Assembly: GCF_023055435.1 (NCBI RefSeq)
Contig: NW_025964001.1
Location: 4,092,001-4,156,000 of the forward strand
Length of the DNA: 64,000 nt
From: Haliotis rufescens
Lineage: Eukaryota
Direction of reading: 5' to 3'
In this document: positions 1,441-47,340 of the stretch, piece after piece
Layout: each line of letters begins with the position of its first letter
Position numbering within the stretch: position 1 is the stretch's first letter
Translations under genes and position numbers: made by a program
The notes under the pieces: generated by a model
The model's input: only the letters and a program-made list of their open reading frames with translations
The model's database searches: none
Told to the model about the DNA's origin: nothing

Positions 1441-4400
1441 CTGCGCCTTGGCTGAGATTATTTGCTCCATGCTGTTGTTGGCACCCTGCAGTCCGTTGAT
1501 CTTGCCCAGGGCAAAGCTGGCCGCGTTCAGAACTTCAAGACTGTTGACATCCACGTTGAACAGACCCCCGGGCATACCTATGTCCCGCCTTTTGGCGCTG
1601 GTGCAACTATGGTGGGTCATATCGGTCATGTGGCTCCAAGGCTGGTCCCAGATAGTCACATCACAGATTTGAGTCTGAAACACACACACACACACAGTCA
1701 TCAATTACACGATCAAGACGCATATATACGTGTGGTTAGATGTATTTACTGGAAACTGGATCCATGACACGACAGATGTATTGGCTAGATACGGTGGGTC
1801 ATTACACGACCAAGATGTATTGGTTAGATACGGTGGGTCATTACACGACCCAGAGGTATTGGTTAGATACGGTGATTCATTCAACGGCCCAGATGTATTG
1901 GTTAGATACGGTGATTCATGACACAACCCAGAGGTATTAGCTGGATACGGTGGGTCATTACACGACCCAGATGTATTGGCTAGATACGGTGGTTCATTAC
2001 ACGACCAAGATGTATTGGCTAGATACGGTGGTTCATAACATGACCCAGAGGTATTAGCTGGATACGGTGATTTATGACGCGACCAGATGTATTGGCTAGA
2101 TATGGTGGTCCATTACACGATCAAGATGTATTGGCTAGATACGGTGGTTCATTACACGACCAAGATGTATTGGCTAGATACGGTTGTTCATGACACGACC
2201 CAGAGGTATTGGCTAGATACGGTGGTTCATTACACGACCAAGATGTATTGGCTAGACACGGTGGTTCATGACACGACCCAGATGTATTGGCTAGATACGG
2301 TGGTTCATTACACGACCAAGATGTATTGGCTAGATACGGTAGTTCATAACATGACCCACTGGTATTAGCTGGATACGGTGATTTATGACGCGACCAGATG
2401 TATTGGCTAGATACGGTGGTTCATTACACGACCAAGATGTATTGGCTAGATACGGTGGTTCATATCATGACCCAGAGATATTAGCTGGATATGGCGATTT
2501 ATGACGCGACCAGATGTATTGGCTAGATATGGTGGTCCATTACACGACCAGGGTGTATTGGCTAGATACGGTGGTTCATATCATGACCCAGAGATATTAG
2601 CTGGATACGGTGATTTATGACGCGACCAGATGTATTGGCTAGATATGGTGGTCCATTAACACGATCAAGATGTATTGGCTAGATATGGTGGTCCATTACA
2701 CGACCAGGGTGTATTGGCTAGATACGGTGGTTCATATCATGACCCAGAGATATTAGCTGGATACGGTGATTTATGACGCGACCAGATGTATTGGCTAGAT
2801 ATGGTGGTCCATTACACGACCCAGATGTATTAGCCATATACGGTGATGGACAAAGCTCATGGCATTGCTGAGTAAACTTCAAATGTCTCAGTCCTAGGCA
2901 AACAAACTTCAGCTGGAGTAGTATGATGGGTTTATGAAATATATTTACTTTTAATAAAGCAAAAAAAACCTTCCCATAATGACAAGAAATCTCTGTTGAA
3001 AACACGTTTTTTATACGAGACATACCTGGGTTCCATCACTCAGGCGGATCTTCAGCATGTAGTTGATGCCAGAAACCACCTGAAATGATATAAAATTGTT
3101 GCATTGAGGCCAGAGAAAACTCAGATCTTCTCTTAATAATGACATATGATCAATATCGGACAGAACACCCACACAGAGAAACCAGGAAACGACAACAAAC
3201 ATCAAAACTTAAAAAAAGATAGATGACGTAGTCATAACACACAAAATGCACATTTATAAATACTGTTTTATCATTACTGTATATTTATAAACGGTGACTG
3301 ATGTCAGTAATCAACTCTAGAAATTCTCATTTTGGTCAATTCCAAAGACATAGACATTATCAGGCTTCAGTGTTCATGGTTAGTGTTTATTCGGGTATTT
3401 ATTATCCCAAAACACACAACCGTGATAACGTTTTTATCAAATAATGTCATTCTTATATATCATTACGTAACAATGTCAGTCAGTCTGAAAGTGACAACTT
3501 GTCAATTCAGTTCCAACTGAAACACTATCTTGACGACAGTGACGTAACTACCACATAGCAAAAAAACCCAATTGACCATAGGTACTTTTTCAATTTGCGT
3601 TTCGCGGCAATCCATCGGTCCGCCCACTGGAGCAGTTTCCCTTTACGAAAGGGAAGCTACTCTAGTCTGTAAAACGCCAAGTTTGTTTACGTTTCGTAAC
3701 GGGATTACAGATTTCAGATTTCCCACACAGTCGCAAAATGAAACAAGGTATATTTCGGACATATACTGAACTGCAAAAGAAACGTCACCCCAAGTAACAT
3801 TGCTGAAAAGTTTACATTTAAATATCTGGGTAATTTTTGTCAAAGTTTCTAAAATTTAACATTACCTTGTCCGGAAAAATGAAATTTGATGACAAAAAAA
3901 CAAAGCGGATGACAATAAAACGGATCGCCCAAACGCATCACGGCAATGGCCATGGTAACCCGATGCACGTGAGTTCCGTGCAAATTGAAATGCACATGCG
4001 TTCCCCCATTTCTTGCCCTATAAAAATCCACCCAGATCGGATAACATTTATTCGTTATTGAATTGCTACCACATGCTAAGATTGACAAGAAATCAGTGAC
4101 ACCAAGCCCTTGGACAATTACAAGCTGGACAAACCGCCTTGCAAGTAGCCAATGCATTTCAAATCCACGTAAGGACCATATACAGGCTCCAGCAACGGCA
4201 CCAGACAACCAACACTACAGATAGTGGAAGATCAAGGGTCACCACTCGACGTCAGGATCGTCAGATTGTGCGACAGCATCTTCAAGATCGCTTTGTTACT
4301 GCTGCGGAAACTGCTCGACAGACCATGGGGATACACCAGAGACACATTAGTGTGTACAACGTGCGTCGACGATTGACGAGCAGACACCTCCACTGTCACA

Positions 4401-7097
4401 GGCCACACTGAGGACCCATTCTGACACCACGTCATCGCCGGGACCGTCTTCAGTGGGCAACACAGCACCAGCATTGGCGCCACCAGCAGTTGAGAAGAGT
4501 CCTCTTCTCAGGCGAGAGCCGTTACTGTGTCTCAACAGCAGATGGGAGAGAGAGAGTCTGTCGACGCCGTGGGGAACGTTATTCAGATGATTGTGTTGAT
4601 GAGAGAGACTCGTGGGGTGGTCCGAGCATCATGGTGTGAGGTGGAATTGGTCTTGCACAGAGGGTCGGCCCTCTGGTCTTCCAGAACATCGGTCCAGGGA
4701 GAGGCAATGGTGTCACAGCAGCTCGGTACATTGATCAAGTCTTGAGACCACACGCTATACCTAATTTGGCACGTCGCCGCAACCACGAATTTCAGCATGA
4801 TAAAGCCCGTGCCCACACTGCGAGAGCAACAAGAGACTTCCTACAGCAGAACGGCATCAAAACCATGCAGTGACCTGCCCTCAGTCCCGATTTAAATCCC
4901 ATTGCACCTGTAGGACGAGATTCAAAGACGGCTGAATGACGTCCGACCAAGGCCGACAACTGCAGCTGAACTGCATCAGGCGTTCCTCAGAGTGTGGCCT
5001 CCTGTGCCTATGGCCTTCATTAACCGCTTCATCCATTCCATGTATCGACGTTGAACGGCAGTCATCAATGCACATGGCGGACACACGAGATACTGACTTG
5101 TGATGCCATTTTCTCAGAGACTAATGTTGTGTTTCACTTTAAGAATATTTGACACTTTAATTTCAACCTTGATGATCAGTTTTGCCAAGTTTCATCTTTT
5201 TAATATGTCTCAAAGTATGTTTACAGTGTTTGGACAAATAAGGTTTCTCATATATCTATCCATGGTGACGTTTCTTTTGCGGTTCAGTATATTTCGTCCA
5301 AATGCAATTGTGTTTAATTCGAGGTCTACAAGTACAGAAATGTAACAGATACCTCGACTGTATTGATATTTTCCGTGTCACAGACTATTATTTATGTAAT
5401 GATAACAATTATCCTTGTAATTTGTCCAGGTACCCGACCATTAGTTCTGAATCGATCGCCGATTGACAAGGGTGATTCCATATTTGTTTGTTAACACTGA
5501 AAGTAGTACCCGCCTGACATCTCACATTTGCATCTTTATCCGAAAATGACCCTTTATCCGACTTTAGCCTACCGAGAAACCTACCCATTATATGATATAT
5601 GCAAGATATGATAGTTTATCCTCCTACTAACATACTTGGGTCTGGGCAGAGATGACTTGGTCCAGACTGTTGTCAGCCCCCTGTAGGCCGTTCAGTGTAA
5701 ACACAGCATAGAGCGCCATCCTCTGGATTTCTGGATCGGTGACATTGGCGGGGGTTGGAGCACCAACAAGCACGGCCCGCTTGCTGCTTGCAGTACATGC
5801 ATGCGTGGTTAATCGCTTGCCGTGTAGAATTGAATCAGAATAAAGGGTGACATCGCAGATCTGGGTCTGAAACACATCACTGCAATCATGTTATAAATGA
5901 GTTGAAATATGAATATCAAAAGGCTATTCTCAGGATATGGTGTGTAATTTCAAGCACACTTGTTATCCTGCTCCTTTTGATATCCACCTTATTACCACAC
6001 TGCAGTTTCATGTCCATTCTTGATTTGATGAGCTGCCATGAGCAAAGTCCTGTAACATGTCACGGGAGAGGTTGGGTAGAGAAGAGGTTAAAGCGTTCTC
6101 TCATTACTCGAAAGACCCTGGCTCGAACCCACACATGGTTACAATGTGTTAAAAGCGAGCATGACGCTCAGTCACTCATCAAATACTGCTGCCCCCAAAC
6201 GCCCGTCGAGACCAACAAGGACAGAAACAACATCTGCAGTGATGTTGTCGCCAGATGTTGACGGACTGGGTCAACGTGTCCTGCGCATCCGACAGCAGAC
6301 GCAGTGAGTGAGAGTGATAGAGGCACATTAGCATGTTAGCAGCTATATATATGTCAAGGAATGGCTCGTACGCAATGTTACACAGGTGTATACCGTATAT
6401 CTGATAGCCTGTGACATATGGCCTGAATATTTCAGTGAAGGTGTAAAACTCTGAAGAGAACTCACCGTCTGTCCGTTCTGCACCTTGAGGGACAGAAAGT
6501 AGTTGAAGCCAGCAATGCCGAAGGCACCGGCGCCAGGGACAACCTGTGAGGGAGGACAGTAATTGAGTCCAAATGATCAACTTTGGAAATAAATGGTATG
6601 AATCACATGCATTATCGATAGCAAATGATAAATTGCAAGTGTTGTTTAACGCAGCTGTATATCCAGGAATATGCGAGTTGTTGTAAGTACTTAAATTCTG
6701 GACCAGACAAACCAGTGTTACCATGACAACGACCCAGGCAACCTTGACAACTGATCCACTTAATTTGGCTTTGCGCCAATCTTAAGATACTAGGGACATA
6801 CTTGTCCCCGGAATCTTTGTTTACAATCTGTTTTGAAACATACCCAAATATACACGTTTTGGCGGACCAGGTGAGGTACACTCACTATTTACTGCGGAAG
6901 TAGGGACAGGCATATAGACAGACACCTACTTGAGTTTTAGCATTCAGAACAGACACGAGGCTTGCGTTCAGCTGGGTAACGGCGAAGCTTGACATCTGCT
7001 GAATGTCCCCTCTGGTCACGTCAGCATCCTTGGGGCTGCTTAAGAGTTGAGACGTGGCTAGTGGTAACACCACCAGGACCAGAGCTAGTATGTTCAT
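1441..7097 (-). CDS. Multicystatin paralogue (copy A), first five exons; continues beyond the left edge of the window
   Basis: Exons 6930-7097, 6466-6543, 5636-5866, 3026-3079, 1441-1674, all GT-AG, phase 0 and open. Same signal peptide as copy B. Linkers SSKR and AKRR. Domain 2 has QVVSG and QPW; domain 1 is divergent (QVVPGAGAFGIAG). Confidence 0.85.
1705..2845. repeat. 39-bp minisatellite in intron 4 of copy A
   Basis: Unit CATTACACGACCAAGATGTATTGGCTAGATACGGTGGTT, degenerate, just under 30 copies. Confidence 0.92.
3764..5289 (+). mobile_element. Tc1-family transposon with both TIRs and a disabled transposase, in intron 3 of copy A
   Basis: TIRs TACTGAACTGCAAAAGAAACGTCACC and GGTGACGTTTCTTTTGCGGTTCAGTA flanked by TA. 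Transposase remnants RVTTRRQDR, QHDKARAH and SPDLNPI with stops. Confidence 0.9.
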
Positions 7098-13575: not shown

Positions 13576-16500
13576 CTAGGCCAGTTGTCCACATGAGTCG
13601 GATACCAGCTGATATTTAGGATCATTCCACGCCTGGTACCACACCGACACCGTGCACGCCATACGCTGCAGCAAAGAAACAAAGACTCACCAACCTAAAT
13701 AACAAAGACTTAATAAAACAAAACAAGCCATAATGAGAAATCTTATTTTCCCCGACACCATGTTTCTGAAGAACATGGCCCTTATCTCTGTTTACCTGGG
13801 GCATGCTGTTGCTGGCGGGACAGTCGGTGATTCCTTTGCCGGTGCTGTCGTCGTTGTTCATGCAAGAGGATGTCACAAGGTGAAGGTCAAACGAGTACTT
13901 CATGCCAGCCACAACCTGTAGACAGTCAAATTGATCTTCAACAACAGAATAACACGACCTTACGTCACATACCACACCTAGAGGTTTCAATGGTGTAGGC
14001 TTCCAAAGGTTATATCTTTGGAGCAATCATTAGGCGTTCCTTGTATTCCAACATGAACACACACGAATAGCCCGGTTTCAAGTAAACGGCCTTAAAGAGT
14101 GATAATTTGATGTTAAGGCTTAAGGGGACAATCTATTTGCCTAATATTTCATATAATCAAGCTGAGGGGTAGATCATTTCATTTCACGGTTGGTGATATA
14201 AAAATGTTGGGAAAAGATAGATTTGTATGACCCACGTCGCACTTAAACTTTACCAGCCTCCATATAGCTGGAATATTGCTACGTACGGCGTTAGACAACA
14301 AACAAATACACTGTGCCACCACTCCCATCTGATGTCTTAATTACCAATAATGACGTCTGTGTTAACAAAACTAAAGAGAGTGTATAAATACGTTAATTGT
14401 TATGACTTCTTATATTGTGCTGCGTGTCCAGATGTGTGGATACCAACAGTGTACATTCATAACGGAAGACGACCTGTGAAGATCCAGGCTAGAATAGGTC
14501 TTCAACAACCCATGCTTGTCGTAAGAGGCGACTATGCTTGTAAGAGGCGACTAACTGGATCGCATGGTCAGGTTCCATCCATACCAATCAGAGACCACAC
14601 CACAATTTGAGAACAAGGTATTTCGCTGAATTGGTTGATGCATGTCATCATGTCCAAAATGCGTGAATTGATGCTCATGATATCATTCACTGGATTGTCT
14701 GTTCCAGACTCGATGATTTAGAGACCGCCGTCATATAGTTTGACTATTGCTGAGTATGGTGTTTAACAAAACATAATGGACGACACAGCTTCGGTAGTAA
14801 TAATAGGGTGTCAAACGTTGCATCATTGGTTTATCCTTAGGGATTCCTTGTATTCCTTTTGATGAAAGAACTGACTGACGATGATCTCGTTCAGTGTTAT
14901 GGGGTATACCTGTTGTGTGACGTGGTCCACTTTCTCAGTCACCATCCGGAACATGTTGTTCATCTTTCCATTCAAAGCGTCTTCTACAAACGACACAGCT
15001 TGCTGCACTGGAGCCGTGAGATTGGCGGGCTCCACACCTCCCACAAAAAGACCTCTCTTGCTGACAGCGGAGCATTTGTGCTCTGTCACCTTCTTTGTGT
15101 TGGTCCAGGATTGGTACCATATCCTCACTTCACACATCTGGGTCTGGGGGTATACAGCACAACCATTAACAGAGTGAGTGAGTGTGCTTTACTGACAGTT
15201 TAAAAATACCACAGCTTTAGTTTGAAAGAGATCTTAAGAGCAAAAACAAAATATATAGAAATGTATAAAGCGGTGTTCTTCTTATGAAAAATGGCATACT
15301 CATTTTACATCTTCAATCTCATAGTGCCCAACTAGTTACAACTACTGAAAACAAATCTTAGCTCACCTTATCTCCATTCTGAAGACTCAGGGTAAGGATG
15401 TAGTTAATACCGGAGACGATCTGAAAGAAAGACATTTTTGAGATGTCGTGCGTCTGAATCCATTTCTTTGACACATACATGAATGGGTATAATGTGATGA
15501 TTGTAGGTCTACACGCAGAAGAAACGTTCCCAAGAACGTATTTAAACAATGTATTTCTATTAACTGTTCTTCAACACTATCCTATGCATTATTGAACAAT
15601 AATACACATTAACAGAAACATCCGTACTTGTTTTCTGGCGTTAACGACTTTGACTAGAGAGTTCTGTTCTCCTTGAAGTCCGTTGATCTCCGTGACAGCG
15701 AAGTTGGCCACTTCCTTAATCTCTGCACTGTTGACGTCCACAGCAGTGACGCCCCCGAGAAGACCCAGTGCACGCTTTGTCACCTGGGTACAGCTGTGCT
15801 GTGTCATCTCCAATTTGTTGAGCCAGGGCTGAGACCAGACCTTCACGTTACAGATCTGGGTCTGAGGGCAGACAGGAGACATAATGATCAGGTAACAGGT
15901 GTAGAATAGAGGCATAGTTGAACAGGTGTAGCGTTACAGGTGTACCGCTGAGAATGTTTCTAACTACTGTCCAGATCTTCACACTAGATCTAGATCTGCG
16001 GACAGACAGGGGGCTTATTAGTCAGGTAACAGTTATAGAACAACATAAAGTACATCATCCTCAAAACATTTAGTTTTAGAATGTATCTGACATCTATCAA
16101 AACAAATAATATAACAGGACTCACCTTGTCCCCTTCCTTAATACGTATGGCCAGGACGTAGTTCACTCCAGCAACAACCTGAAACGTTTGAAGAAACGTT
16201 TGAAGAAGTATAAAGGACATGCATTGTGCACTGTGTGTACTACCTGTATAATTATGTACTGCTTAAGAAATATCTTAGGTAAAGCTCAGGCAACCTCTCA
16301 CAATATTTGTCACAGAAATATCATTATTGCATGCTGCTTCTGGTATAGGCCTGATACAATACCATTTTCCTTGACACAAGTAAGCTTTGGTTATGGGACA
16401 TGTATACAGCCAAACGATCTTGTAGAATTATGAGTAATATGTACATGTGTAAAGTCAATGCTGGCCTTACTTGAGTTTTGGCTGAGATAATTTGCTCCAT

Positions 16501-19500
16501 GCTGTTCTGGGCACCCTGCAGTCCGTTGATCTTGCCGAGGGCAAAGTTGGATATGTTCAGTACTTCAAGGCTGTTGACGTCCACGTTGGTCAGACCCCCG
16601 GGCATCCCGTTCCGCTTGGTGGCGGTGGTGCAGCTATGGTGGGTCAGCTTGGTCATGTGGGTCCAGGGCTGGTCCCAGATGGTCAAGTCACAGATCTGGG
16701 TCTGTAGCAAAGTCATCGATTACATGACCGGGACGAGTGGTCACATGTATTGACTGGACACAGTGATCCATTACACGACCAGGGCGAGTGGTTAGATGTA
16801 TTGACTGGACACAGTGATCCATTACACGACCAGGGCGAGTGGTTAGATGTATGGACTGGACACAGTGATCCATTACACGACCAGGACGAGTGGTTAGATG
16901 TATTGACTGGACACAGTGATTCATTACACGACCAGGGCGAGTGGTTAGATGTATTGACTGGACACAGTGATCCATTACATGACCAGGACGAGTGGTTAGA
17001 TGTATTGACTGGACACAGTGATCCATTACATGACCAGGACGAGTGGTTAGATGTATTGACTGGACACAGTGATCCATTACACGACCAGGACGAGAGTATG
17101 TAAGATGTATTGACTGGACACAGTGATCCATTACATGACCAGGACGAGTGGTTAGATGTATTGACTGGACACAGTGATCCATTACATGACCGGGACGAGT
17201 GGTCACATGTATTGACTGGACACAGTGATCCATTACATGACCAGGACGAGTGGTTAGATGTATTGACTGGACACAGTGATCCATTACACGACCAGGACGA
17301 GTGGATGGATGTATTGACTGGACACAGTGATCCATTACATGACCAGGACGAGTGGTTAGATGTATTGACTGGACACAGTGATCCATTACATGACCAGGAC
17401 GAGTGGTTAGATGTATTGACTGGACACAGTGATCCATTACACGACCAGGACGAGAGTATGTAAGATGTATTGACTGGACACAGTGATCCATTACATGACC
17501 GGGACGAGTGGTCACATGTATTGACTGGACACAGTGATCCATTACACGACCAGGACGAGTGGTTAGATGTATTGACTGGACACAGTGATTCATTACACGA
17601 CCAGGACGAGTGGTTAGATGTATTGACTGGACACAGTGATCCATTACACGACCAGCGCGAGTGGTAAGATGTATTGACTGGACACAGTGATCCATTACAC
17701 GACCAGGACGAGTGGATGGATGTATTGACTGGACACAGTGATCCATTACACGACCAGGGCGAGTGGTTAGATGTATTGACTGGACACAGTGATCCATTAC
17801 ACGACCAGGACGAGTGGTTAGATGTATTGACTGGACACAGTGATCCATTACACGACCAGGACGAGTGGATGGATGTATTGACTGGACACAGTGATTCATT
17901 ACATGACCGGGACGAGTGGTTAGATGTATTGACTGGACACAGTGATCCATTACACGACCAGGACGAGTGGTTAGATGTATTGACTGGACACAGTGATCCA
18001 TTACACGACCAGGACGAGTGGTTAGATGTATTGACTGGACACAGTGATCCATTACACGACCAGGACGAGTGGATGGATGTATTGACTGGACACAGTGATC
18101 CATTACACGACCAGGGCGAGTGGTTAGATGTATTGACTGGACACAGTGATCCATTACACGACCAGGGCGAGTGGTTAGATGTATGGACTGGACACAGTGA
18201 TCCATTACACGACCAGGACGAGTGGTTAGATGTATTGACTGGACACAGTGATCCATTACATGACCGGGACGAGTGGTAAGATGTATTGACTGGACACAGT
18301 GATCCATTACACGACCAGGACGAGTGGATGGATGTATTGACTGGACACAGTGATCCATTACACGACCAGGACGAGTGGTTAGATGTATGGACTGGACACA
18401 GTGATCCATTACACGACCAGGACGAGTGGTTAGATGTATTGACTGGACACAGTGATCCATTACACGACCAGGACGAGTGGTTAGATGTATTGACTGGACA
18501 CAGTGATCCATTACACGACCAGGGCGAGTGGTTAGATGTATTGACTGGACACAGTGATTCATTACACGACCAGGGCGAGTGGTTAGATGTATTGACTGGA
18601 CACAGTGATCCATTACACGACCAGGACGAGTGGATGGATGTATTGACTGGACACAGTGATCCATTACACGACCATGACGAGTGGTTAGATGTATTGACTG
18701 GACACAGTGATCCATTACACGACCAGGGCGAGTGGTAAGATGTATTGACTGGACACAGTGATCCATTACATGACCAGGACGAGAGTATGTAAGATGTATT
18801 GACTGGACACAGTGATCCATTACACGACCAGGACGAGAGTATGTAAGATGTATTGACTGGACACAGTGATCCATTACACGACCATGACGAGTGGTTAGAT
18901 GTATTGACTGGACACAGTGATCCATTACACGACCAGGACGAGAGTATGTAAGATGTATTGACTGGACACAGTGATCCATTACATGACCAGGACGAGTGGT
19001 TAGATGTATTGACTGGACACAGTGATCCATTACACGACCAGGACGAGTGGTTAGATGTATTGACTGGACACAGTGATCCATTACACGACCAGGACGAGAG
19101 TATGTAAGATGTATTGACTGGACACAGTGATCCATTACATGACCAGGACGAGAGTATGTAAGATGTATTGACTGGACACAGTGATCCATTACACGACCAG
19201 GACGAGAGTATGTAAGATGTATTGACTGGACACAGTGATCCATTACACGACCAGGACGAGAGTATGTAAGATGTATTGACTGGACACAGTGATCCATTAC
19301 ATGACCAGGACGAGTGGTTAGATGTATGGACTGGACACAGTGATCCATTACACGACCAGGACGAGTGGTTAGATGTATTGACTGGACACAGTGATCCATT
19401 ACACGACCAGGACGAGAGTATGTAAGATGGATTGGTTGGAATTAGCTCAGCTTCTGTTTTCGCTATCCATGGCACATTGCCGAGTAAACTCCAAATATAT

Positions 19501-22500
19501 TAGTCCTCGACAAACACGGTTGAGCTGGAGTAGTTTGACGGGTTTATTAAACCCTCTCCATTGTCTAATAAATACTCATAAGACTATTCGTCACAAGAAA
19601 TCTCTGCTAAAAACACATTATTTTATACAAGACATACCTGGGTTCCATCAATCAGGCGGATCTTCAGAATGTAGTTGGTGCCAGCAACCACCTGAAATAA
19701 GATAAGATTGTTGTGTTGACGCCAGAGAAACAACTCAGATCTTCTCTTAATAATGAAATATAAACAATATCTGAAACAGTGAAATCAATAAACGAAAACA
19801 AACATCAAAATTTGAAAAGATGTTAAAATCGATACTGCAGTCGGAAACACATATTTATAAATTATGTCATAGCACACTATTTACTTTATAAACGGTGACT
19901 TAGCCTAGACCTATACCAGGAGACACCAATATTAGGTGAGTTATCGAAGAAGAATTTGTCACATGACAAATTATATCCGCCTTCTAAGATACCTGGGTCT
20001 TGGCAGAGATGACTTGATCCAGACTGTTTTGGGCCCCCTGTAGGCCGTTCAGTGTAGTCACAGCAAAGGTCGCCATCCTCTGGATATCTGTACGGTTGAC
20101 ATCGACGGAGGTTGGAGCACCAACAAGCACGGCCCGCTTGCTGCGTGTAGTACATGCATGATGGGTAACACGCTTGTCGTTCAGCCATGCACGTGACCAG
20201 ATGGTAACAGTGCAGATCTGGGTCTAGAACACATCACCGCAATTGTGTCATAAGGATTTGAAAAAAAGAAAATCAAACACAATCGTGGTGATTCAAGTAC
20301 AGAATCCGTCCCCATTACATGTGAACAGCCTTAACCATGGCAACACCATCTGAAATGGAGTCTCTGGTTCGAATCCACACATGGTAACATTGTGTTAAGT
20401 GCATTCTGGTTGCCCCGCCATATGGATGGGATAGTGTTAAAAGCGGCGTCATCAACATTTGACCCTACTCGTCTGCAACACTTCGCGGGACTCTAAAACA
20501 CCCCTATCTGCGTCCCATGGAATCGTCTGGACCAACAAGGACAGAAGCAACAACAGTTGGGATGATGTCTCCAGATGTTGATGGGGAGCAGACGTAGTGA
20601 ATGAGAATGAGAGAGCAATAATAACTATTAACTATTCATGTACATCGACGAATGCTTGTTTTTTACCAGTGGGATGGCCACAGGGAGAGAGAGAGACAGA
20701 CAGACAGACAAAAGACAGACAGACAGAGAGAGAGAGAGAGAGAGGGGGAGGGGGTATGCACAATTCTTCAGAGGCCGGGATCTTAAGGGCTGAGTCACCC
20801 AATAATGAGGACATGTAAGCTTAGTGAGTGCTGGCATATCAGTGTGTAAAAATCTGAAGAGAACTCACCTGCTGTCCGTTCTGTATCTCGATGGTCAGTA
20901 AGTAGTTGACGCCAGAGACAACCTGTGAAGAAGAAGAAGTAAAAGCTCAGCATCTGAAACACAACTCCGGTGTTCCGAACTCGGATATAGCGAAGTATAG
21001 GCCATCATAATATTGAGTTCAAATAATCAACATTGGAAAACATAGTACAGAACTATAAATCACACGCATTATAGTAAGCTGTGCAATTCCCTCCTGGTGT
21101 CGTTGATAAACAGTGAATGTTGTTTAACGTTGCAATTTGCAATTTCCCAGCAATATTATGACGATGGTAAGTAATCGTGTTTGAACCAGGCAAACCAGTA
21201 AGCGATAGCATGAGCAACGATCCGCTATCGGGGCCTGATGGCACGTTGTCAGAGCTTGACCAACCCCTCCTGTTGGCTCTTAAACCAAGCTTGGGATGCA
21301 GGAGACCTAATCTCCCCCAGAGTCCTCACCAGGTTCCCAACTAATAAAAATAAGGCTGTAATAAGTATGACAATAATAAAAAGACCAACCCCTGGATTTA
21401 CATGAAATGCGTTAGTTCTCAGAATAGATTATGTTTAGTTGAGTCAAATATACAATTTAATTTATTTTTATATGATGACACCCTAATATATCTTTTTTTT
21501 ATTCACGGTGCCTAAATTCAATCCCCAAATAGTTTATTGTCCACTTTTTTATAAGCATAAAATCTATTTATTCCGCAAAAACAAATGCTGGACTACCTCT
21601 TTGATAACATCAATGTACACTTTGGAGGTAGAACATTTGAGCAACATTTGTGCTCCCCTACTTGCTAATCTGTTTCTCTATGCATATGAATCGGAGTTTC
21701 TCTTCGGATTGGTAAAAAGAAAAAAAAGGGTAATTTATCTGAGAGGTTTAACTTTAACTTCAGGTATATCGAGGATCTGATGTTGTTCAATAACAATCAA
21801 AGAGCCAGTTCCCTTCCACTGTTTTACCCACCTGAACTAGAAATAAAGGAGACCAGTGAGACCGCCACGTCCATTTCATATTTAGATCTATGCATAAAGA
21901 TTCAGAGTGACAAAACATTCTCCACAAGACTGTATGACAAGAGGGATGACTTCAACCTTCCAATAGTCAACTTTCCCTTCATGTCTAGCAATATTCCTGC
22001 AGCTCAAGCCCGTGGTGTCTACTTTCACAAGTTTTGAGGTTCAATCGAGAATGGTCTCAAAATTGCAAAGAGCGTCATGCAACTCTTGCTTGGAAGTGGT
22101 TTGATGAAGGTTGCAACATTCAGGGCCTCAGTTAAGCTTTCAAATATTTTATGGTAGACATGTGGATGACATTTCCAAATTTGCCGCATCAGTGACAAGA
22201 ATGATGTCTGATGCAATTCCCTATTTTTTTCCCGTTCCCGTGTTTTTTAAGGTGAACAATTAACTTGCCATTGCATGTGTTTGTGACGGTTGCCACCGGT
22301 AGGGCAGGGCACGCTCCCCTTTTCGCGAACACCTGGTATCATCACTATTTGATAGTGATTCATAAACGGATACTTATGAAAACAGTCGGAATCACACAAT
22401 TAACTCTGCTTTTTGGCAAGCATGTCTTATTAATATGGAAAATAGATTGTCGCTTATATCTACACAGCTCTTAGCAATATTCTAACAATATCACGGCGGA

Positions 22501-22802
22501 GGACACTAGAAATGAGCTTCCGACATTGTACCCATTTCAGGCCTTCGCGTTAACCACTAGGCTACCCCGCCGTCCCTATTTACTGCAGAGGTAAAAACAG
22601 ACATATAGATACCTACTTGAGTTTTAGCATCCACTACAGACACCAGAGTGTTCTGTGACCCGAGGAGCGTGTTCAGCTGGGTTAGGGCGAAGCTTGCCAT
22701 CTGCTGAATGTCGTCCCTGTTCACGTCGACAGCCACGGGGCCGCCTATGAGTTGAGACGTGGCTAGTGGTAACACCACAAGGACCAGAGCTAGTATGTTC
22801 AT
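13576..22802 (-). CDS. Secreted five-domain multicystatin precursor (copy B, complete, 513 aa)
   Basis: Exons, all GT-AG and phase 0: 22617-22802, 20869-20922, 19993-20223, 19638-19691, 16471-16701, 16125-16178, 15628-15861, 15367-15420, 14910-15143, 13796-13915, 13576-13665 (1542 nt including TAG). Signal peptide MNILALVLVVLPLATS. Five QxVxG motifs formed across junctions (QVVSG, QVVAG, QVVAG, QIVSG, QVVAG). N-terminal G/GG in each domain, PW-like second loops (RAW, QPW, QPW, QSW, QAW) and paired cysteines. Linkers RSKR, ATKR, VTKR, VSKR. Confidence 0.9.
14468..14770 (+). mobile_element. SINE-like dispersed repeat (third family) in intron 9 of copy B
   Basis: GACCTGTGAAGATCC...CAACCCATGCTTGTCGTAAGAGGCGAC...GGATTGTCTG recurs at about 24377-24565 and 30527-30860, and on the minus strand at 45040-45300 and 55545-55810. 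Confidence 0.7.
16720..19428. repeat. 51/54-bp minisatellite (about 50 copies) in intron 4 of copy B
   Basis: Unit TGACTGGACACAGTGATCCATTACACGACCAGGACGAGTGGTTAGATGTAT, with a 54-bp variant containing GAGAGTATGTAAG. Confidence 0.97.
21585..22410 (+). mobile_element. Penelope-like retroelement RT fragment in intron 1 of copy B
   Basis: CAPLLANLFLYAYE, YPPELEIKET, SYLDL and LYDKRDDFNLPIVNFPFMSSNIP. The paralogous copy is at about 39585-41240, interrupted by a minisatellite. Confidence 0.75.
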
Positions 22803-29637: not shown

Positions 29638-32584
29638 CTAGGCCAGTTGTCCTCATGAGTCGGATACCAGCTGATATTTAGGATCATTCCATGCCTGGTA
29701 CCACACCGACACCGTGCACGTCATACGCTGCAGCAAAGAAACAAAGACTCAACAACCTAAATAACAAAGACTTAATAAAATAAAACAAGCCATAATGAGA
29801 AATGTTATTTTCCCCGACACCTTGTTTCTGAAGAACATGGTCCTTATCTCTGTTTACCTGGGGCATGCTGTTGCTGGCGGGACAGTCGGTGATTCCTTTG
29901 CCGGTGCTGTCGCCGTTGTTCATGCAAATGGATGTCACAAGGTGAAGGTCAAATGAGTACTTGATGCCAGCCACAACCTGTAGACAGGCAAATTGATCTT
30001 CAACAACAGAATAACACGACCTTACGTCAAATACCACACCTAGAGGCTTCAATAGTGTAGGCTTCCAAAGGTTATATCTTTGGAGCAATCATTAGGCGTT
30101 CCTTGTATTCCAACATGAACACACACGAATAGCCCGGTTTCAAGTAAACGGCCTTAAAGAGAGATAATTTGATGTTAAGGCTCAAGGGGACAATCTATTT
30201 GCCTAATATTTCATATAATCAAGCTGAGAGGTAGATCATTTCATTTCACGGTTGGTGATATAAAAATGTTGGGAAAAGATAGATTTGTATGACCCACGTC
30301 GCACTTAAACTTTACCAGCCACCATATAGCTGGAATATTGCTACGTACGGCGTTAGCCAGCAAACAAATAAGCTTTGCGACCACTCCCATCTGAGGGAAC
30401 GATGTCTTAATTATCAATAATGACTTCTATGTTAACAACACTTGCTACGTTAATTGTTATGACTTCTTATATTGTACTGCGTATCCTGATGTGCGGATAC
30501 CAACAGTGTATATTCCTAATGGAAGACGACCTGTGAAGATCCAGGTTAGAATAGGTCTTCAACAACCCATGCGTGTCGTAAGAGGCGACTATGCTTGTCC
30601 TAAGAGGCGACTATGCTTGTCGTAAGAGGCGACTAACTGATCGCATGGTCAGGTTCAATCCATACCAATCAGAGATCACACCATAATTTGAGGATAAGTT
30701 ATTTCGCTGAATTGGTTGATGCATGTCATCATGTCCCAAATGCGTGAATTGATGCTCATGCTATCAATCACTGGATTGTTTGTTCCAGACTCGATGATTT
30801 AGAGACCGCCGTCATTAAGTTTCACTATTGCTGAGTATGGTGTTTAACAACAAACAAACAAACGTTGCATCATTGGTTCAATCTTTAGGGATTCCTTTTG
30901 ATGAAAGAACTGTATGGCGATGATCTCGTTCAGTGTTATGGGGTATACCTGTCGTGTGACGTGGTCCACTTTCTCAGTCACCATCCGGAACATGTTGTTC
31001 ACCTTTCCAGTCAAAGAGTCTTCTGCAAACGACACGGCTTGTTGCACTGGAGCCGTGAGATGGGCGGGCTCCACACCTCCCAGAAAAAGACCTCTCTTGC
31101 TGACAGCGGAGCATTTGTGCTCTGTCACCTTCTTTGTGTTAGTCCAGGATTGGTACCATATCCTCTCTTCACACATCTGGGTCTGGGGGTATACAGTACA
31201 ACCATTAACAGAGTGAGTGAGTGTGCTTTACTGACAGTTTACAAATATCACAGCTTTAGTTTGAGAGAGAACTTAAGAGCAATAACAAAACCCGTGTATA
31301 AAGCGATGTTCTTCTTATGAAAATGGCAACCCATTTTACACCTTCAAACTCATAGTGCCCAACTAGTTACAACTCCTGAAAACAAATCTTAGCTCACCTT
31401 ATCTCCATTCTGAAGACTCAGGGTAAGGATGTAGTTAATACCAGAGACGATCTGAAAGAAAGACATTTTTAGAAACTTAAATACGTCGTGCGTCTGAATC
31501 CATTTCTTTGACACATACATGAATGGGTATAATGTGATGATTGTAGATCTACACTCAGAAAAATGTTCCAAAGAACGTATTTGAACAATGTATTTCCATT
31601 AACTGTTCTTCAACACTATCCTATGCATTATTGAACAATGACACACATCAACAGAAACGTCCGTACTTTTTTGACTAGAGAGTTCTGTTCTCCTTAAAGT
31701 CCGTTGATCTCCGTGACAGCGAAGTTGGCCACTTCCTTAATCTCTGCACTGTTGACGTCCACAGCAGTGACGCCCCCGAGAAGACCCCCGGCACGTTTTG
31801 TCACCTGGGTACAGCTGTGCTGTGTCATCTCCAATTTGTTGAGCCAGGGCTGAGACCAGATCTTCACGTTACAGATCTGGGTCTGAGGGCAGACAGGAGA
31901 CATAATGATCACGTATCAGGTGTAGAATAGAGGCATAGTTGAACAGGTGTAGCGTTACAGGTGTACCGCTGAGAATGTTTCTAACTACTGTCCAGATCTT
32001 CAAGCTACAGATCTAGATCTGCGGACAGACAGGTGGATTAATAGTCACGTAACGGTTGTAGAACAACATAAAGTATATCACCCTCAAAACACCCTCAAAA
32101 TGTATCTGATATCTTTCAGAAAATATAATAAAACAGGACTCACTTTGTCCCCTTCCTTAATACGTATGGCCAGGACGTAGTTCACAACAGCAACAACCTG
32201 AAACGTATGAAGAAGTATAGATGGACACACAAGGATCCCCCTTGTTCACTGTGTGTACTGAGTGTATACTAGTACTTATGTACTGCTTAAGAAATCACTT
32301 ATGTAAAAGGCAACCTCTCACAATATTTGTCACAGAAATATCATGATTGCATGCTGCTTCTGGTATAGGCCTGATACAATACCATTTTCCTTGACACAAG
32401 TAAGCTTTGGTTATGGGACATGTATACAGCCAAACGATCTTGTAGAATTATGAGTCATATCAACATGTGTCAAGTCAATACTGGCCTTACTTCAGTTTTG
32501 GCTGAGATAATTTGTTCCATGCTGTTCTGGGCACCTTGCGGTCCGTTGATCTCGCCCAAAGTTGGCCATGTTCAGTACTTCAAG
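29638..32584 (-). pseudogene. Multicystatin copy C, decayed 3' exons (domains 3-5)
   Basis: Exon remnants 32491-32584, 32144-32197, 31667-31882, 31398-31451, 30949-31182, 29858-29977, 29638-29727. Lesions relative to copy B: 5-nt deletion near 32555, QVVAG changed to EVVAV, CAA to TAA at 31694-31696, 18-nt deletion near 31668 removing the motif Gln, TGT to TGA at 29653-29655. Confidence 0.88.
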
Positions 32585-35500
32585 TGGTGAGGTCACCAAG
32601 ACCAATACGTACCTGTTTTCTTTTGGTATTCCGACTCTTCCACCTTCAATTCGAGCAGGATATTGTAGTATCAAGGTTGATATGTAAATACCAAATCCAC
32701 TTAATGCTACAAGTGTCAACATTATGGCCATGGTTCCAGAGCTTGGGACAAACAGGCTGCGTGTCATCGCTGTGGTGGCAATTGTGCAGACAGTTATGAG
32801 TGTGATCAAGATCCCTCATGTGTGAATTGTGGCGGTAACCCTGTTTCCTCGTCAAAAGAATGTCCAGTATGGAAACGCGAGTCAAAGGTTGTCAAAGTCA
32901 AACATGAGCGGAACATCTCTTTTCAGGATGCTAAGAATATTGTTTTAGATGAAGAACAGTAGGTTCGAAATTCTTACTCTGCCGTTGTTTCACGACCAAA
33001 TTGACGGCCTGTTCCCCAGCCTGTTTCACACACCACTGTCGGATGTCAGACAGATTACACATTGACCACAACGGAATCACCTGAAATTCTTTCACTTTCT
33101 TCTAATTCAGCAACTGTTTTAGAAACTGCCAGTTCTCATACACCTACCCCAAAACCAGCTAGGAAATCAAATCCAAATGTTGACTACTCATTAACAAAAG
33201 GCAAATAAGGGTCTCCCTAAGGGTCATAGAGATCCTGTTACTATGTTTAATAGGTTTGGTGTGTTCGAGGACATGGATGTGTCTTCACAAAACACACGAT
33301 CCAGATGCCATTCCCCTAGGAAAAAAGGCTGTGAGCGGTCTCCTGTCATTGCACCATAATGCATAGTAACACAATTATACAATGGAACTGTCGATGGCTA
33401 AGGGCGAATTTTGATGAGGTTAAATTTCTATCTAAAGAACTTAATCCCGTGGCTTTTGTCTTCAAGAAACATATTTAAGAGAATGCGATAATCTTGACTA
33501 CCGTCAATATCATATGTTTCATTCATATGCGAAGGTTACCAATGGTAAAAGAACGGGTGGTGCCAGTGTACTCGTTCGCGTGGAACATTACACAGTGCTG
33601 TACCACTAAATACCAACCTACTGGCGGTTGCAGTACGAATAACTCTGCATATTGCTATAGCTTTATGTTCTCTGTATTTACCACCATCCACTGCACTTCA
33701 GATAAAAGATTTAGATACTCTTATCCTAATCCATTTTTGCTTATGGGCGATCTTAATGGTCACAACCCATTGTGGGGTTCGGGTGATCAAAATTATAAAG
33801 GAAAAATACTTGAAAAGTTGCTCCAGAAGCAGGGTCTCTTTCTATCTAATGATGGTAGCAACACGTATTTACATCCAGCGACTGGTACTTACTCAGCTCT
33901 TGATTTAGCCTTTGCTGATCCGTCTCTTTTGGATGAGTTCTCATAGTCAGTACATGATGACCTGTGTGGGAGTGATCATTTCCCAACCATACTCAAAACC
34001 TTTGAACATTTTATTGATGATCCTGATCAGATCAGATCATTTTCGGATAAATTAATAAACATTGCCACAGAAACCATGCCCAAGACCTCGACAAAAATCC
34101 ACATGTAAAAACACCATGGTGATGATTGTAGAAAAGCTAGGAAACATAGGAAAAAGTCTGAAAGAGTGTTTAATAAACAGCCCACGGCCAATAATTTAAA
34201 CTGCTTACGAATGTCAAAAGCAAAGGTTCGTAGAACAATTAAACAAAATGAACGTACAAGCTGGAAATAGTTTGTTTCGAAAATACATTCTCGTACCCCC
34301 CTTAATAAAGTATGGAATATGATAAGAAAGATAAAAGGAAAGGGGTCTCAGCGCAATATTCAGCATCTACAATCATGATGTATTGACATCAAAACAGGAT
34401 ATTGCTAATAAGTTGGCAGAAACGTTCAGCCAAAATTCCTCATCTGCCAACTATGACCCAAAATTTCTAAAATTTCTAAATCAGCAGGAAAGGAAAATTC
34501 TGAATTTTCGGTCTGATGGTTCAGAGGATTACAACGAATCCTTTTCCTTGACTGAGTTACAAGAGGCTTTGAAGAAGGCTCATGATACAGCCTCTGGGCC
34601 AGATGACGTACATTATCAATTTTTGAAACATCTTCCTGACCCTTCTCTGTTAACCCTTTTATCCATATTTAATAGTATATGGGAAAATGGTAACTTCCCT
34701 CCTTCCTGGCATGAGGCTACTATAATACCTGTGCCTAAACCAGGTAAGGATCACACATTCTTCAAATTACAGACCTATTGCTCTGACAAGTTGTCTCTGT
34801 AAAACCATGGAACAGATGATCAACTGGCGTCTCGTTTGGTTTCTTGAATCAAATAATCTGATCACAGACATTCAGTGTGGTTTTAGACACCAGAGGAGCA
34901 CCATCGATCATCTTGTCCGATTGGAATCATTTGTACGGAATGGCTTTGTAAACAAGCAGAATGTTGTGTCGATCTGTTTTTATCTTGAGAAGGCTTACGA
35001 TACCACATGGAAGTATGGTATATTAAAAGATCTCCACGACATGGGTTTACATCACTCGCTTTTTAGAAGATAGAAAATTTAAAGTTAGAGTAGGCTCCAC
35101 ATTGTCCGAAATATATGATCAGGAAATGGGGGTCCCTCAGGGCAGTATTTTATCAGTGACACTTTTTAGCACACAAATCAACATTCTTGCTAAGGTTTTA
35201 AATGAAAATATTGATGGTTCGTTGTTTGTTGACGATTTTAATGTTTCATGCCGTGGTGCAAATATGAATACCATTGAGAGACAATTACAACTTTGTCTCT
35301 ATAAAATACAAAAATGGGCCTTTAGAAAATGGTTTTAAATTTTCCAAAACTAAAACCTGCTGTGTTCATTTTTGCAACAAACGGAAACTGCATAAAGATC
35401 CAGAATTGACTTTAAATAATATTCCAATAAAAGTGGTCAAAGAAACCAAGTTTTTTTGGTATTACCTTTGATAAAAGTTATCATTTAAACCTCACATTAA

Positions 35501-37085
35501 AAATCTTAAAGCTAGATGTTTGAAAGCGCTTGACATTTTAAGGTAGTGTCAAATGATAGGTGGGTTGGTGATAGAGAAACACTATTACATCTCTATAGAA
35601 CTTTGATAAGGTCTAAACTTGATTACGGCTGCTTCATTTATGGTTCAGCTCGTAAATCATACATTCGAGTACTATTCACCATCAGGGACTTCGGTTGTGT
35701 CTTGGAGCATTTAGGACATCGCCAATTGACAGTCTATATGTGGAAGCCATTGAACCCAGTCTTAGCCTAAGACGAATAAAACTGGCATTACAATATATCA
35801 CTAAACTCCGCTCCAATCCTTCTAATCCAGCATTTAACAATATCTCCCGTGCTCCATATCAGCATTTATATATCAGAAATCCAAACACAATCCCACCACT
35901 TAGCATTCGCTTGCAATCCCATATCAAGGATGCCCATTTAAATCTCTCTGCCATTGCCGAATACAAAATGTCAGAAATGCCTCCTTGGCAATCGATACAA
36001 CCTGATGTTAATTTAGAATTAGCGAACCTGAAGAAGTCTGACACTAATCAATTATTTTATCAACAAGAATTTCATGAACTGAAGAACCGATACTCCTCTA
36101 ATACCAGTATTTACACTGATGGTTCAAAAGATGGCGAAAAGGTGTCTGCTGCAGCTGTTGCTAACAATCATACAGTGTCTATACGTATAACTGACGGAAG
36201 TTCGATATTTACGGCAGAAGCTCAGGCTATATTATTAGCTTTGCAATATATTGAACAGTCTTCTAAACGCAGTTTTCTCATATTATCTTATAGTTTGTCC
36301 TGTTTACAGGCAATCAAAAATCGAAAAGTGGATCATCCATTTTTAGCTGAAATTTTAAGGTGTCATCTCAATTAAGCCGTAGCTGGAAAAGATGTAATGT
36401 TTTGTTGGCTGCCAAGTCATGTTGGCATTAGGGCAACTGTAAAGCAGATTCTTCGGCAAAAGCCACTCTTAATAAACCAACTTCAAACACAAACTTCCCA
36501 TATTCTGATCTAAATCCTTCCATCAGACAATATGTGAATGATCATTGGCAAACAAGCTGGAATACCAAGACTATGAACAAACTTCATGCTATCAAACCAC
36601 TGATTGGAGGTAATGCACGTTCTGGTTTATATCGTCATGATGAAGTTGTTTTACAGCGGTGCCGCAATGGCCACAGTTATTATACACATTCATTTTTATT
36701 GAAGGGTGAAGATCCACCTTTTTGTATACCTTGCCATAGCCCTCTTACTATAAAGCACATTCTGCTGGAATGTGTTGATTTTGCACTTGTCAGACAACGT
36801 TTTTATGATAATGTTCATACCTTATCTGAACTTTTTACCACAGTTTCTAATCACTTGATATTAGCGTATTTAAAGGAAATCAAATTCTCATTGATAAAAT
36901 ATAGATTTATACCTGAACAGTCAGTCTTTCACCTATGAATGTAATACATGACTGAGATTTTAGTGATTTTCAACATCACTTTTATTATATTCGTTGATAT
37001 ATGTTTACACAAAGGGCATTTCTCGCCGCGAAAAGCTGCAAAAGTGCTGATTCGGCGTAAAGAAATATTCACTCACTCACTCACT
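32585..37085 (+). mobile_element. Non-LTR retrotransposon (I group, Nimb/I-like), 5'-truncated and degenerate, inserted in exon 5 of copy C
   Basis: ORF1 remnant with zinc knuckles (CYKCQHYGH, CVNCGG). ORF2 from about 33359 carries APE motifs (IIQWNC, MGDLNGHNPLWGS, GSDHFP), RT (GPDDVHY, GVPQGSILS, FVDD), RNase H (IYTDGSK, FTAEAQAI, WLPSHVG) and a C-terminal CxxC..H...C. (ACTC)n tail at 37071-37085. Many stops and frameshifts. Confidence 0.93.
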
Positions 37086-47250: not shown

Positions 47251-47340
47251 TTTTCTTGGCGCTGACCAGAGAGGTCTGTGCCTCTTGAAGTCCGTTTGCC
47301 TCCGTGAGAGCGCAGTTGGCCACTTCCTGAATCTCCACTA
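47251..47340 (-). pseudogene. Isolated relic of a multicystatin long exon
   Basis: Translates as VEIQEVANCALTEANGLQEAQTSLVSAKK, alignable to copy B exon 7 AEIKEVANFAVTEINGLQGEQNSLVKVVNARK. Confidence 0.7.

What the first reader, a model, noticed from the sequence alone, without database searches (positions are those of the whole stretch)
14910..20922. All-phase-0 two-exon cassette out of register with the domains, allowing chimeric cystatins
Seen: the gene is an array of [54-nt exon + 231/234-nt exon] x4, and every coding exon length is a multiple of 3. Each long exon codes the end of one domain, the KR linker and the start of the next, and each QxVxG motif is created at a splice junction (Q|V). 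Inference: the array grew by duplicating this offset cassette. Skipping or unequal crossover of any cassette keeps the frame and joins the N-terminal trunk and helix of one domain to the hairpin loops of another, a built-in route to new inhibitor specificities.
Basis: partly seen in the sequence, partly recalled or inferred. Interest (0 to 1): 0.75.

Follow-up and report, generated by a model that had tools for sequence, protein, structure and literature searches.

The report
Abalone five-domain cystatin gene, phase-0 exons
This is an already annotated abalone gene for a secreted chain of five cysteine-protease inhibitor domains; its unusual exon pattern is inherited from ordinary cystatin genes, and there is no sign that it is spliced into hybrid inhibitors.

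Summary
On the minus strand there are four [54-nt + 231/234-nt] exon pairs. All exon lengths divide by 3, all introns are GT..AG, and every QxVxG is split Q|V. The gene runs beyond the given span (13576-22802): 11 coding exons, five cystatin domains, 513 aa. It is identical to RefSeq "multicystatin-like isoform X1" of Haliotis rufescens.

- **Intron positions:** the first matches one of the two conserved cystatin C introns (aa 55 and 93). For the second I rely on recalled numbering.
- **Splicing:** spliced contigs from four runs show only adjacent-exon junctions among the listed joints. The two RefSeq isoforms differ only in the last exon.
- **Paralogues:** the three tandem copies here have 6, 5 and 2 domains. 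Both changes lie inside long exons at the linker, in register with the domains.
- **Other species:** RefSeq models of H. asinina and H. rubra do carry offset units and hybrid-type domains. I could not check their DNA, and AU tests are weak.

Verdict: a new member of a known kind, of modest interest.

The parts
22617..22802 (-). Exon E1 (186 nt): start codon, hydrophobic signal-like N-terminus, and the N-terminal part of domain 1 up to the Q of QVVSG
   Evidence: PF00031, 24.9 bits, profile positions 1-44. Identical to P0154 residues 1-62.
20869..20922 (-). Exon S1 (54 nt): VVSG loop plus strand 3 of domain 1
   Evidence: In the structure model the strands 52-63 and 67-77 flank the Q62|V63 junction.
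19993..20223 (-). Exon L1 (231 nt): strands 4-5 of domain 1, the KR linker, then the N-terminal part, helix and strand 2 of domain 2
   Evidence: The linker 107-115 has pLDDT below 50.
19638..19691 (-). Exon S2 (54 nt)
   Evidence: The loose end at 16704 in all 4 runs reads into this exon.
16711..19416 (.). 51-bp minisatellite, 52.5 copies, inside the S2-L2 intron
16471..16701 (-). Exon L2 (231 nt)
   Evidence: Joint 16178/16471 seen in 3 of 4 runs.
16125..16178 (-). Exon S3 (54 nt)
15628..15861 (-). Exon L3 (234 nt)
   Evidence: PF00031, 24.7 bits. Joints on both sides.
15367..15420 (-). Exon S4 (54 nt)
   Evidence: Joints 15143/15367 and 15420/15628 seen in 4 of 4 runs.
14910..15143 (-). Exon L4 (234 nt). 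Relative to copy A it is a mosaic: the 5' ~78 nt match A's L4a, and the rest matches A's L5'.
13796..13915 (-). Exon X5 (120 nt): VVAG loop, strand 3 and a two-Cys loop of domain 5
   Evidence: Joint to L4 seen in 3 of 4 runs.
13576..13665 (-). Terminal exon Z (87 nt + stop): strands 4-5 of domain 5
   Evidence: Joint to X5 seen in 2 of 4 runs.
1441..7097 (-). Copy A, 5' part (E1, a 78-nt S1, L1, S2, L2). The gene continues to window coordinate -5278 in L001. It has six domains and 610 aa.
   Evidence: Equals P0156.
29641..41643 (-). Copy C. E1-S1-L1-S2 and the first 84 nt of L2 are intact (RefSeq model of 207 aa, two domains). A 4.5-kb insert follows, and then decaying exons (L3 with TAA, Z with a stop).

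Best explanation
The finding is the middle of a constitutively spliced abalone gene. The gene encodes a secreted polyprotein of five cystatin (cysteine-protease inhibitor) domains joined by Lys-Arg linkers. It is one of three tandem paralogues.

The exon pattern is inherited. The first of the two introns inside each domain lies at the position of the first intron of vertebrate type-2 cystatin genes, at the tip of the first hairpin (Q|VxG). The second lies at the turn before strand 4, and I read it as the second of those introns on recalled numbering. There is no intron between domains, so the last exon of one domain and the first exon of the next form one long exon.

Because both introns fall between codons, every internal exon is symmetric. 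This is a by-product of descent, not an adaptation.

Domain number changes in evolution mainly through homology-driven unequal recombination. Within a gene, the only similarity between repeats is in the exons. Transposon truncation also contributes.

**Shown here:** the gene model, the splicing, the paralogue structures, and the breakpoints of copy A against B.

**Inferred:** secretion, inhibitory activity, cleavage at KR, and the recombination mechanism.
For: - **Exon model:** coordinates, phases and splice sites are.
- **Splicing:** contigs from 4 runs carry all 6 of the 6 junctions in the laid stretch. Exon bins have depths of hundreds to thousands; intron bins have 0-50.
- **Match to RefSeq:** the exon-by-exon translation equals RefSeq P0154, 513 aa.
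- **Cystatin identity:** PF00031 hits on E1 and on the second half of the L exons. Best PDB sequence hit is potato multicystatin 4lzi, E = 6.3e-35. The AF2 model gives helix plus strands in each of the 5 domains, with low-confidence linkers.
- **Intron positions:** cystatin C introns lie at amino acids 55 and 93, and the structure is conserved with salivary cystatins and kininogen (PMC2189307 abstract). P0154 residues 17-76 align to cystatin C chain residues 8-69, which puts Q62|V63 at 55|56.
- **Copy A against B:** B's L4 equals A's L4a over the first ~78 nt (27-28 of 30 identical per window). After that it equals A's L5' (29-30 of 30). The flanking introns follow the same pattern.
- **Homology only in exons:** no similarity between introns of different cassettes.
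- **Copy C:** it ends just after the last Cys of domain 2. The insert carries endonuclease and RNase H remnants.
Against: - Contigs drop rare variants, and 106 of the 121 joints were not shown, so rare skipping isoforms are not excluded.
- Eight of the 18 Haliotis proteins decoded have type orders that change at exon boundaries. Examples are N3+M2+C2 in two H. asinina paralogues and N1+M1+C2 in H. rubra. So out-of-register events probably occur and persist.
- The phase of the human introns, and the Q55 and Cys numbering, are recalled rather than shown by a call.
Confidence: 0.75

Rival explanations
1. One reading: the offset, all-phase-0 cassette works as a diversity generator. Exon or cassette skipping in RNA, or intron-based unequal crossover in DNA, routinely joins the front of one domain to the hairpins of another and so makes new inhibitor specificities.
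For: - All exon lengths divide by 3.
- Hybrid-type domains occur in RefSeq models of H. asinina (611 and 703 aa; 285 and 279 aa) and H. rubra (420/421 and 781 aa).
- RefSeq isoform X2 of this gene splices X5 to a terminal exon that lies beyond copy A. So long-range in-frame joins are at least modelled.
Against: - None of the 15 listed joints skips an exon.
- No RefSeq isoform returned here for H. rufescens, H. cracherodii or H. asinina lacks a cassette.
- Both domain-number changes readable in this genome are in register with the domains.
- AU tests cannot reject other placements of the 30-aa C parts (p = 0.49 and 0.285).
- No functional data exist.
Confidence: 0.15
2. The hybrid arrangements in other abalone species are artefacts. 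Because all exons are phase 0, gene predictors can skip exons lost in assembly gaps, or join exons of neighbouring tandem paralogues, and still keep an open frame.
For: - The H. rubra 781-aa model repeats a three-domain block at about paralogue-level similarity. Its first exon is shared with isoform X1 of the neighbouring 421-aa model. It also joins S4 directly to a terminal exon.
- The H. rubra contig is only 411 kb.
- The H. asinina 285 and 279-aa models have an odd N-terminus with no signal-like start.
Against: The extra S2+L2-type unit occurs in two separate H. asinina models (611 and 703 aa) on a 66.9-Mb contig. The two copies of the unit differ from each other, as real duplicates would.
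Confidence: 0.3

Closest known systems
Vertebrate type-2 cystatin genes (cystatin C, salivary cystatins)
   Same: - QxVxG, a second-hairpin Trp and a C-terminal disulfide are present.
- There are two introns per domain. The first matches amino acid 55 of cystatin C. For the second (amino acid 93) the match rests on recalled Cys numbering.
- Domain 5 has four Cys and a 120-nt middle exon. The 114-nt size of the cystatin C middle exon is my recollection.
   Different: There are five domains in one chain. Domains 1-4 lack the first disulfide loop, so their middle exon is 54 nt. There is no intron between domains.
Kininogen (three cystatin domains)
   Same: It has tandem cystatin domains, and its exon-intron structure is conserved with cystatin C (PMC2189307 abstract).
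   Different: From my recollection, not from a call: each kininogen domain has its own three exons, with introns between domains. Here the domain junctions lie inside exons. Kordis and Turk state that multidomain cystatins arose independently in different lineages (PMC2784779).
Potato multicystatin (PDB 4lzi) and other invertebrate multicystatins
   Same: - Potato multicystatin is the best PDB sequence match: three stretches, E = 6.3e-35.
- Of the 150 best library hits to the long-exon profile, 141 have two or more matched stretches, up to 17.
- Named examples are Armadillidium 'Multicystatin', Cherax, Schistocerca 'T-kininogen 2' and a Lethocerus venom cystatin.
   Different: These are independent origins according to PMC2784779. 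In Cherax, isoform X4 lacks a 134-aa block that runs from linker to linker, so it is in register with the domain.

Membership tests
Cystatin family (Pfam PF00031, type-2-like) | Profile match above the curated cut-off | tested here: met
   E1 scores 24.9 bits and L3 24.7 bits against a cut-off of 22.2. L1 scores 22.0, L2 12.4 and L4 13.1, but each of these exons holds only half a domain. PF00031 is precomputed for P0154.
Cystatin family (Pfam PF00031, type-2-like) | QxVxG first hairpin, Trp in the second hairpin, N-terminal Gly | tested here: met
   QVVSG, QVVAG, QVVAG, QIVSG and QVVAG: 5 of 5 domains. Trp in the second hairpin: 5 of 5. Pro-Trp: 2 of 5. Gly or Gly-Gly before the helix: 5 of 5 (read).
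Cystatin family (Pfam PF00031, type-2-like) | Cystatin fold (a helix packed on an antiparallel sheet) | tested here: met
   The AF2 model has helix plus four long strands in each of the 5 domains, with domain pLDDT about 70-85 and mean pLDDT 65.8. I ran no fold search. The PDB sequence hits are all cystatins or cystatin-derived scaffolds.
Cystatin family (Pfam PF00031, type-2-like) | Inhibition of papain-like proteases | not testable with these tools
Conserved type-2 cystatin gene structure | Intron after the Q of QxVxG (amino acid 55 of cystatin C) | tested here: met
   PMC2189307 abstract. P0154 residues 17-76 align to 1g96_A residues 8-69, which places Q62 at residue 55. The Q55-G59 numbering is recalled.
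Conserved type-2 cystatin gene structure | Second intron at amino acid 93 of cystatin C, just before strand 4 | tested here: inconclusive
   In all 5 domains the intron lies 3 residues before the Cys of strand 4. The match to 93|94 rests on recalled Cys97 numbering.
Multidomain cystatin polyprotein | Two or more cystatin domains in one reading frame and one transcript | tested here: met
   Five domains. Contigs join L2-S3-L3, for example X6 record 21. RefSeq model of 513 aa.
Multidomain cystatin polyprotein | Cleavage at the dibasic linkers | not testable with these tools
   KR is present in 4 of 4 linkers. There are no protein data.
   None of the 15 listed joints skips an exon (106 not shown; contigs only). 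Isoforms X1 and X2 differ only in the last exon.

The most novel reading that the evidence does not exclude
In abalone the multicystatin cluster evolves by recombination at or near exon boundaries. This repeatedly builds hybrid inhibitor domains: the N-terminal trunk, helix and strand 2 come from one domain and both hairpins come from another. Such hybrids are kept as working genes, for example the N3+M2+C2 domain shared by two H. asinina paralogues. That would be a natural shuffling route to new protease specificities.
Probability: 0.2. Interest if true: 0.55.

Novelty: new member of a known kind. Interest (0 to 1): 0.33.

Why it matters
The case shows how a repeat protein can have its exon units offset from its folding units. 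It also shows that this offset alone does not decide how the repeats evolve.

In this genome, the domain-number changes I could read sit at the linkers inside exons. Other abalone species may hold hybrid domains. If those hybrids are real and active, the cluster would be a compact natural system for studying how cystatin specificity is divided between the N-terminal part and the hairpin loops.

Otherwise this is an ordinary, already annotated protease-inhibitor gene.

Tried and rejected
- **Separate trees for domain parts.** I built trees for the N parts and for the M+C parts from six collinear genes. The type clades are recovered, but the relations among types are an unresolved polytomy. The order in which the array grew, and whether it grew in register, cannot be read from them. 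The 18-aa short exon alone was too short for the tree tool.
- **AU tests on the 30-aa C parts.** They could not reject placing the H. rubra domain-1 C part with type 1 (p = 0.49), or the H. asinina domain-3 C parts with type 3 (p = 0.285). Those type calls rest on the best tree (support 85.6) and on identity (86% against 55%).
- **Similarity between introns of different cassettes.** None was found.
- **Single-domain secreted cystatin in the same genome as an internal control.** The PF00031 scan found only this cluster and one stefin-like exon on another contig, which has its QMVAG inside an exon.
- **Literature.** Searches listed no paper on abalone multicystatin. PMC6003135 has no occurrence of 'cystatin'. 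The search for the Gln55 numbering and PMC5072729 did not give it. This library lacks most subscription journals. I did not ask for any supplementary files.
- **Not possible here.** I had no DNA of the H. asinina or H. rubra loci, no raw RNA reads (the raw runs offered were miRNA libraries), and no reads over the 5' half of the gene.
- Exons were searched one by one. For whole-protein steps I used database proteins that the tools returned.
Full report
**What is there.** The gene lies on the minus strand. Exon by exon it reads as follows.

| Exon | Window coordinates | Length |
|---|---|---|
| E1 | 22617-22802 | 186 nt |
| S1 | 20869-20922 | 54 |
| L1 | 19993-20223 | 231 |
| S2 | 19638-19691 | 54 |
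| L2 | 16471-16701 | 231 |
| S3 | 16125-16178 | 54 |
| L3 | 15628-15861 | 234 |
| S4 | 15367-15420 | 54 |
| L4 | 14910-15143 | 234 |
| X5 | 13796-13915 | 120 |
| Z | 13576-13665 | 87 + stop |

All 11 coding exons have lengths divisible by 3, and all 10 introns are GT..AG. All five QxVxG motifs are split after Q. Each long exon runs from strand 4 of one domain, through a KR linker, to the Q that ends strand 2 of the next domain. The gene is longer than the given span and has five domains, not four.

**Cystatin identity.** Pfam PF00031 matches E1 and the second half of the long exons. The best PDB sequence match is potato multicystatin, E = 6.3e-35. An AlphaFold model of the RefSeq protein shows helix plus strands in each of five domains, with low-confidence linkers (mean pLDDT 65.8). 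In that model the first intron falls at the tip of hairpin 1 and the second at the turn between strands 3 and 4.

**Transcription and splicing.** I had one counted read-laying run.
- All 6 exon junctions in that stretch appear as joints: Z|X5 in 2 of 4 runs, X5|L4 in 3, L4|S4 in 4, S4|L3 in 4, L3|S3 in 3, and S3|L2 in 3.
- A loose end at 16704 reads into S2 in all four runs.
- Exon bins have depths of hundreds to thousands; most intron bins have 0-50. So these runs behave as RNA, although they are only guessed to be RNA.
- Of the 15 joints listed, 6 are these junctions and 9 lie in 14281-14722, a very deep repeat inside the L4-X5 intron. None joins non-adjacent exons.
- A further 106 joints were not shown, and contigs drop rare forms. 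Rare skipping is therefore not excluded.

**It is an annotated gene.** A profile of nine long exons found 317 library proteins at E ≤ 0.001. Of the 150 listed, 141 have two or more matched stretches. A search with the 516-aa hit returned named RefSeq proteins.
- P0154, "multicystatin-like isoform X1 [Haliotis rufescens]", 513 aa, equals my exon-by-exon translation.
- Isoform X2 (P0171) differs only in the last exon. That exon lies at window coordinate -14053 to -13967, beyond copy A.
- A cDNA-derived H. discus hannai protein is collinear with S3 through Z.

**The exon pattern looks inherited.** The abstract of PMC2189307 says that the cystatin C gene is interrupted at amino acids 55 and 93, and that this structure is conserved with salivary cystatins and kininogen. 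P0154 residues 17-76 align with cystatin C chain residues 8-69, which puts Q62|V63 at 55|56. In all five domains the second intron lies three residues before the Cys of strand 4. Its equivalence to 93|94 rests on recalled Cys numbering, as does the phase of the human introns. What differs here is that no intron separates the domains. A stefin-like exon elsewhere in this genome has its QMVAG inside an exon.

**Paralogues in this genome.** All 14 long-exon matches in the 1.33-Gb assembly lie in one 45-kb stretch.
- Copy A (window 7097 to -5278, 610 aa) has six domains, and all its exon lengths divide by 3, including a 78-nt S1.
- B's L4 matches A's L4a over its first ~78 nt. From the codons after the last Cys onward it matches A's L5'. 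The flanking introns follow the same pattern, with a 22-nt overlap.
- So B and C differ from A by one whole domain of about 1.9 kb, with both breakpoints inside long exons at the linker. Which form is ancestral is not settled. Both forms also exist in H. asinina.
- Copy C is cut in L2 just after the last Cys of domain 2 by a 4.5-kb insert with endonuclease and RNase H remnants. Its downstream exons carry stops. RefSeq models it as a 207-aa protein, and H. cracherodii has a 209-aa counterpart.
- Both changes are in register with the domains.
- Introns of different cassettes share no detectable similarity. Homologous crossover within a gene can therefore start only in exons. That last step is my inference.

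**Other species.** I split 18 Haliotis proteins at the exon-equivalent points and typed each part. Ten are collinear. Eight are not.
- The H. asinina 611 and 703-aa proteins have an extra unit of S2 type plus L2 type. It gives a domain with an N3-type front (N3 clade support 98.3) and type-2 hairpins (78-86% identity, against 55-61% for the next type).
- The H. rubra 420/421-aa models lack L1+S2.
- The H. asinina 285/279-aa models read N2+M3+C4.
- The H. rubra 781-aa model looks like two neighbouring paralogues joined together.

However, they are gene models whose DNA I could not see, and AU tests on the short C parts are not decisive.

**Deep history and context.** Trees of the parts do not resolve how domains 1-4 arose. 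Multidomain cystatins are reported from lophotrochozoans and are said to have arisen independently by domain duplication (PMC2784779, passages read). In a crayfish multicystatin, one RefSeq isoform lacks a 134-aa block that runs from linker to linker.

**Verdict.** This is a normal member of a known kind with an inherited exon pattern. Evolution by repeat-unit gain and loss is real. Hybrid domains may exist in congeners. Splicing-based hybrid production is not seen.

Noticed in passing
window 16711-19416; also 37177-37608 and 1692-2821: A 51-bp minisatellite fills the S2-L2 intron: 52.5 copies in copy B and about 430 bp in copy C. Copy A has a roughly 60%-similar array at the same place.
   Followed up: partly
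window 14236-14775: Part of the L4-X5 intron has contig depths of 10^4 to 10^5 in all four runs, with many odd joints and loose ends. It looks like a dispersed, highly transcribed repeat.
   Followed up: no
window 32595-37092: The insert that breaks exon L2 of copy C has plus-strand ORFs matching endonuclease-reverse transcriptase (Exo_endo_phos_2, E = 3.4e-11) and, weakly, RNase H. This is a decayed non-LTR retroelement.
   Followed up: partly
L003, window coordinates -13792 to -14053: An orphan X5-like fragment and an intact terminal-exon copy lie beyond copy A. RefSeq isoform X2 of copy B uses this terminal exon, about 27 kb from X5.
   Followed up: partly
window 47264-47335: A lone fragment resembling the helix part of a long exon (71% identity to L3 over 24 aa) lies upstream of copy C.
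   Followed up: no
window 6466-6543 and 5636-5866: Domain 1 of copy A has a 78-nt short exon (a 24-nt in-frame insertion in the VVxG loop). It also lacks the second-hairpin Trp.
   Followed up: partly
copies A and B, exon by exon: Identity between A and B is uneven. The first half of L3 is 99% identical at nucleotide level, but L1 only about 81%. This suggests gene conversion or unequal constraint along the gene.
   Followed up: no
L002 4020-4187 (G000:C445): A stefin-like exon with QMVAG inside the exon. It follows a long Cys-rich tandem repeat ORF.
   Followed up: partly
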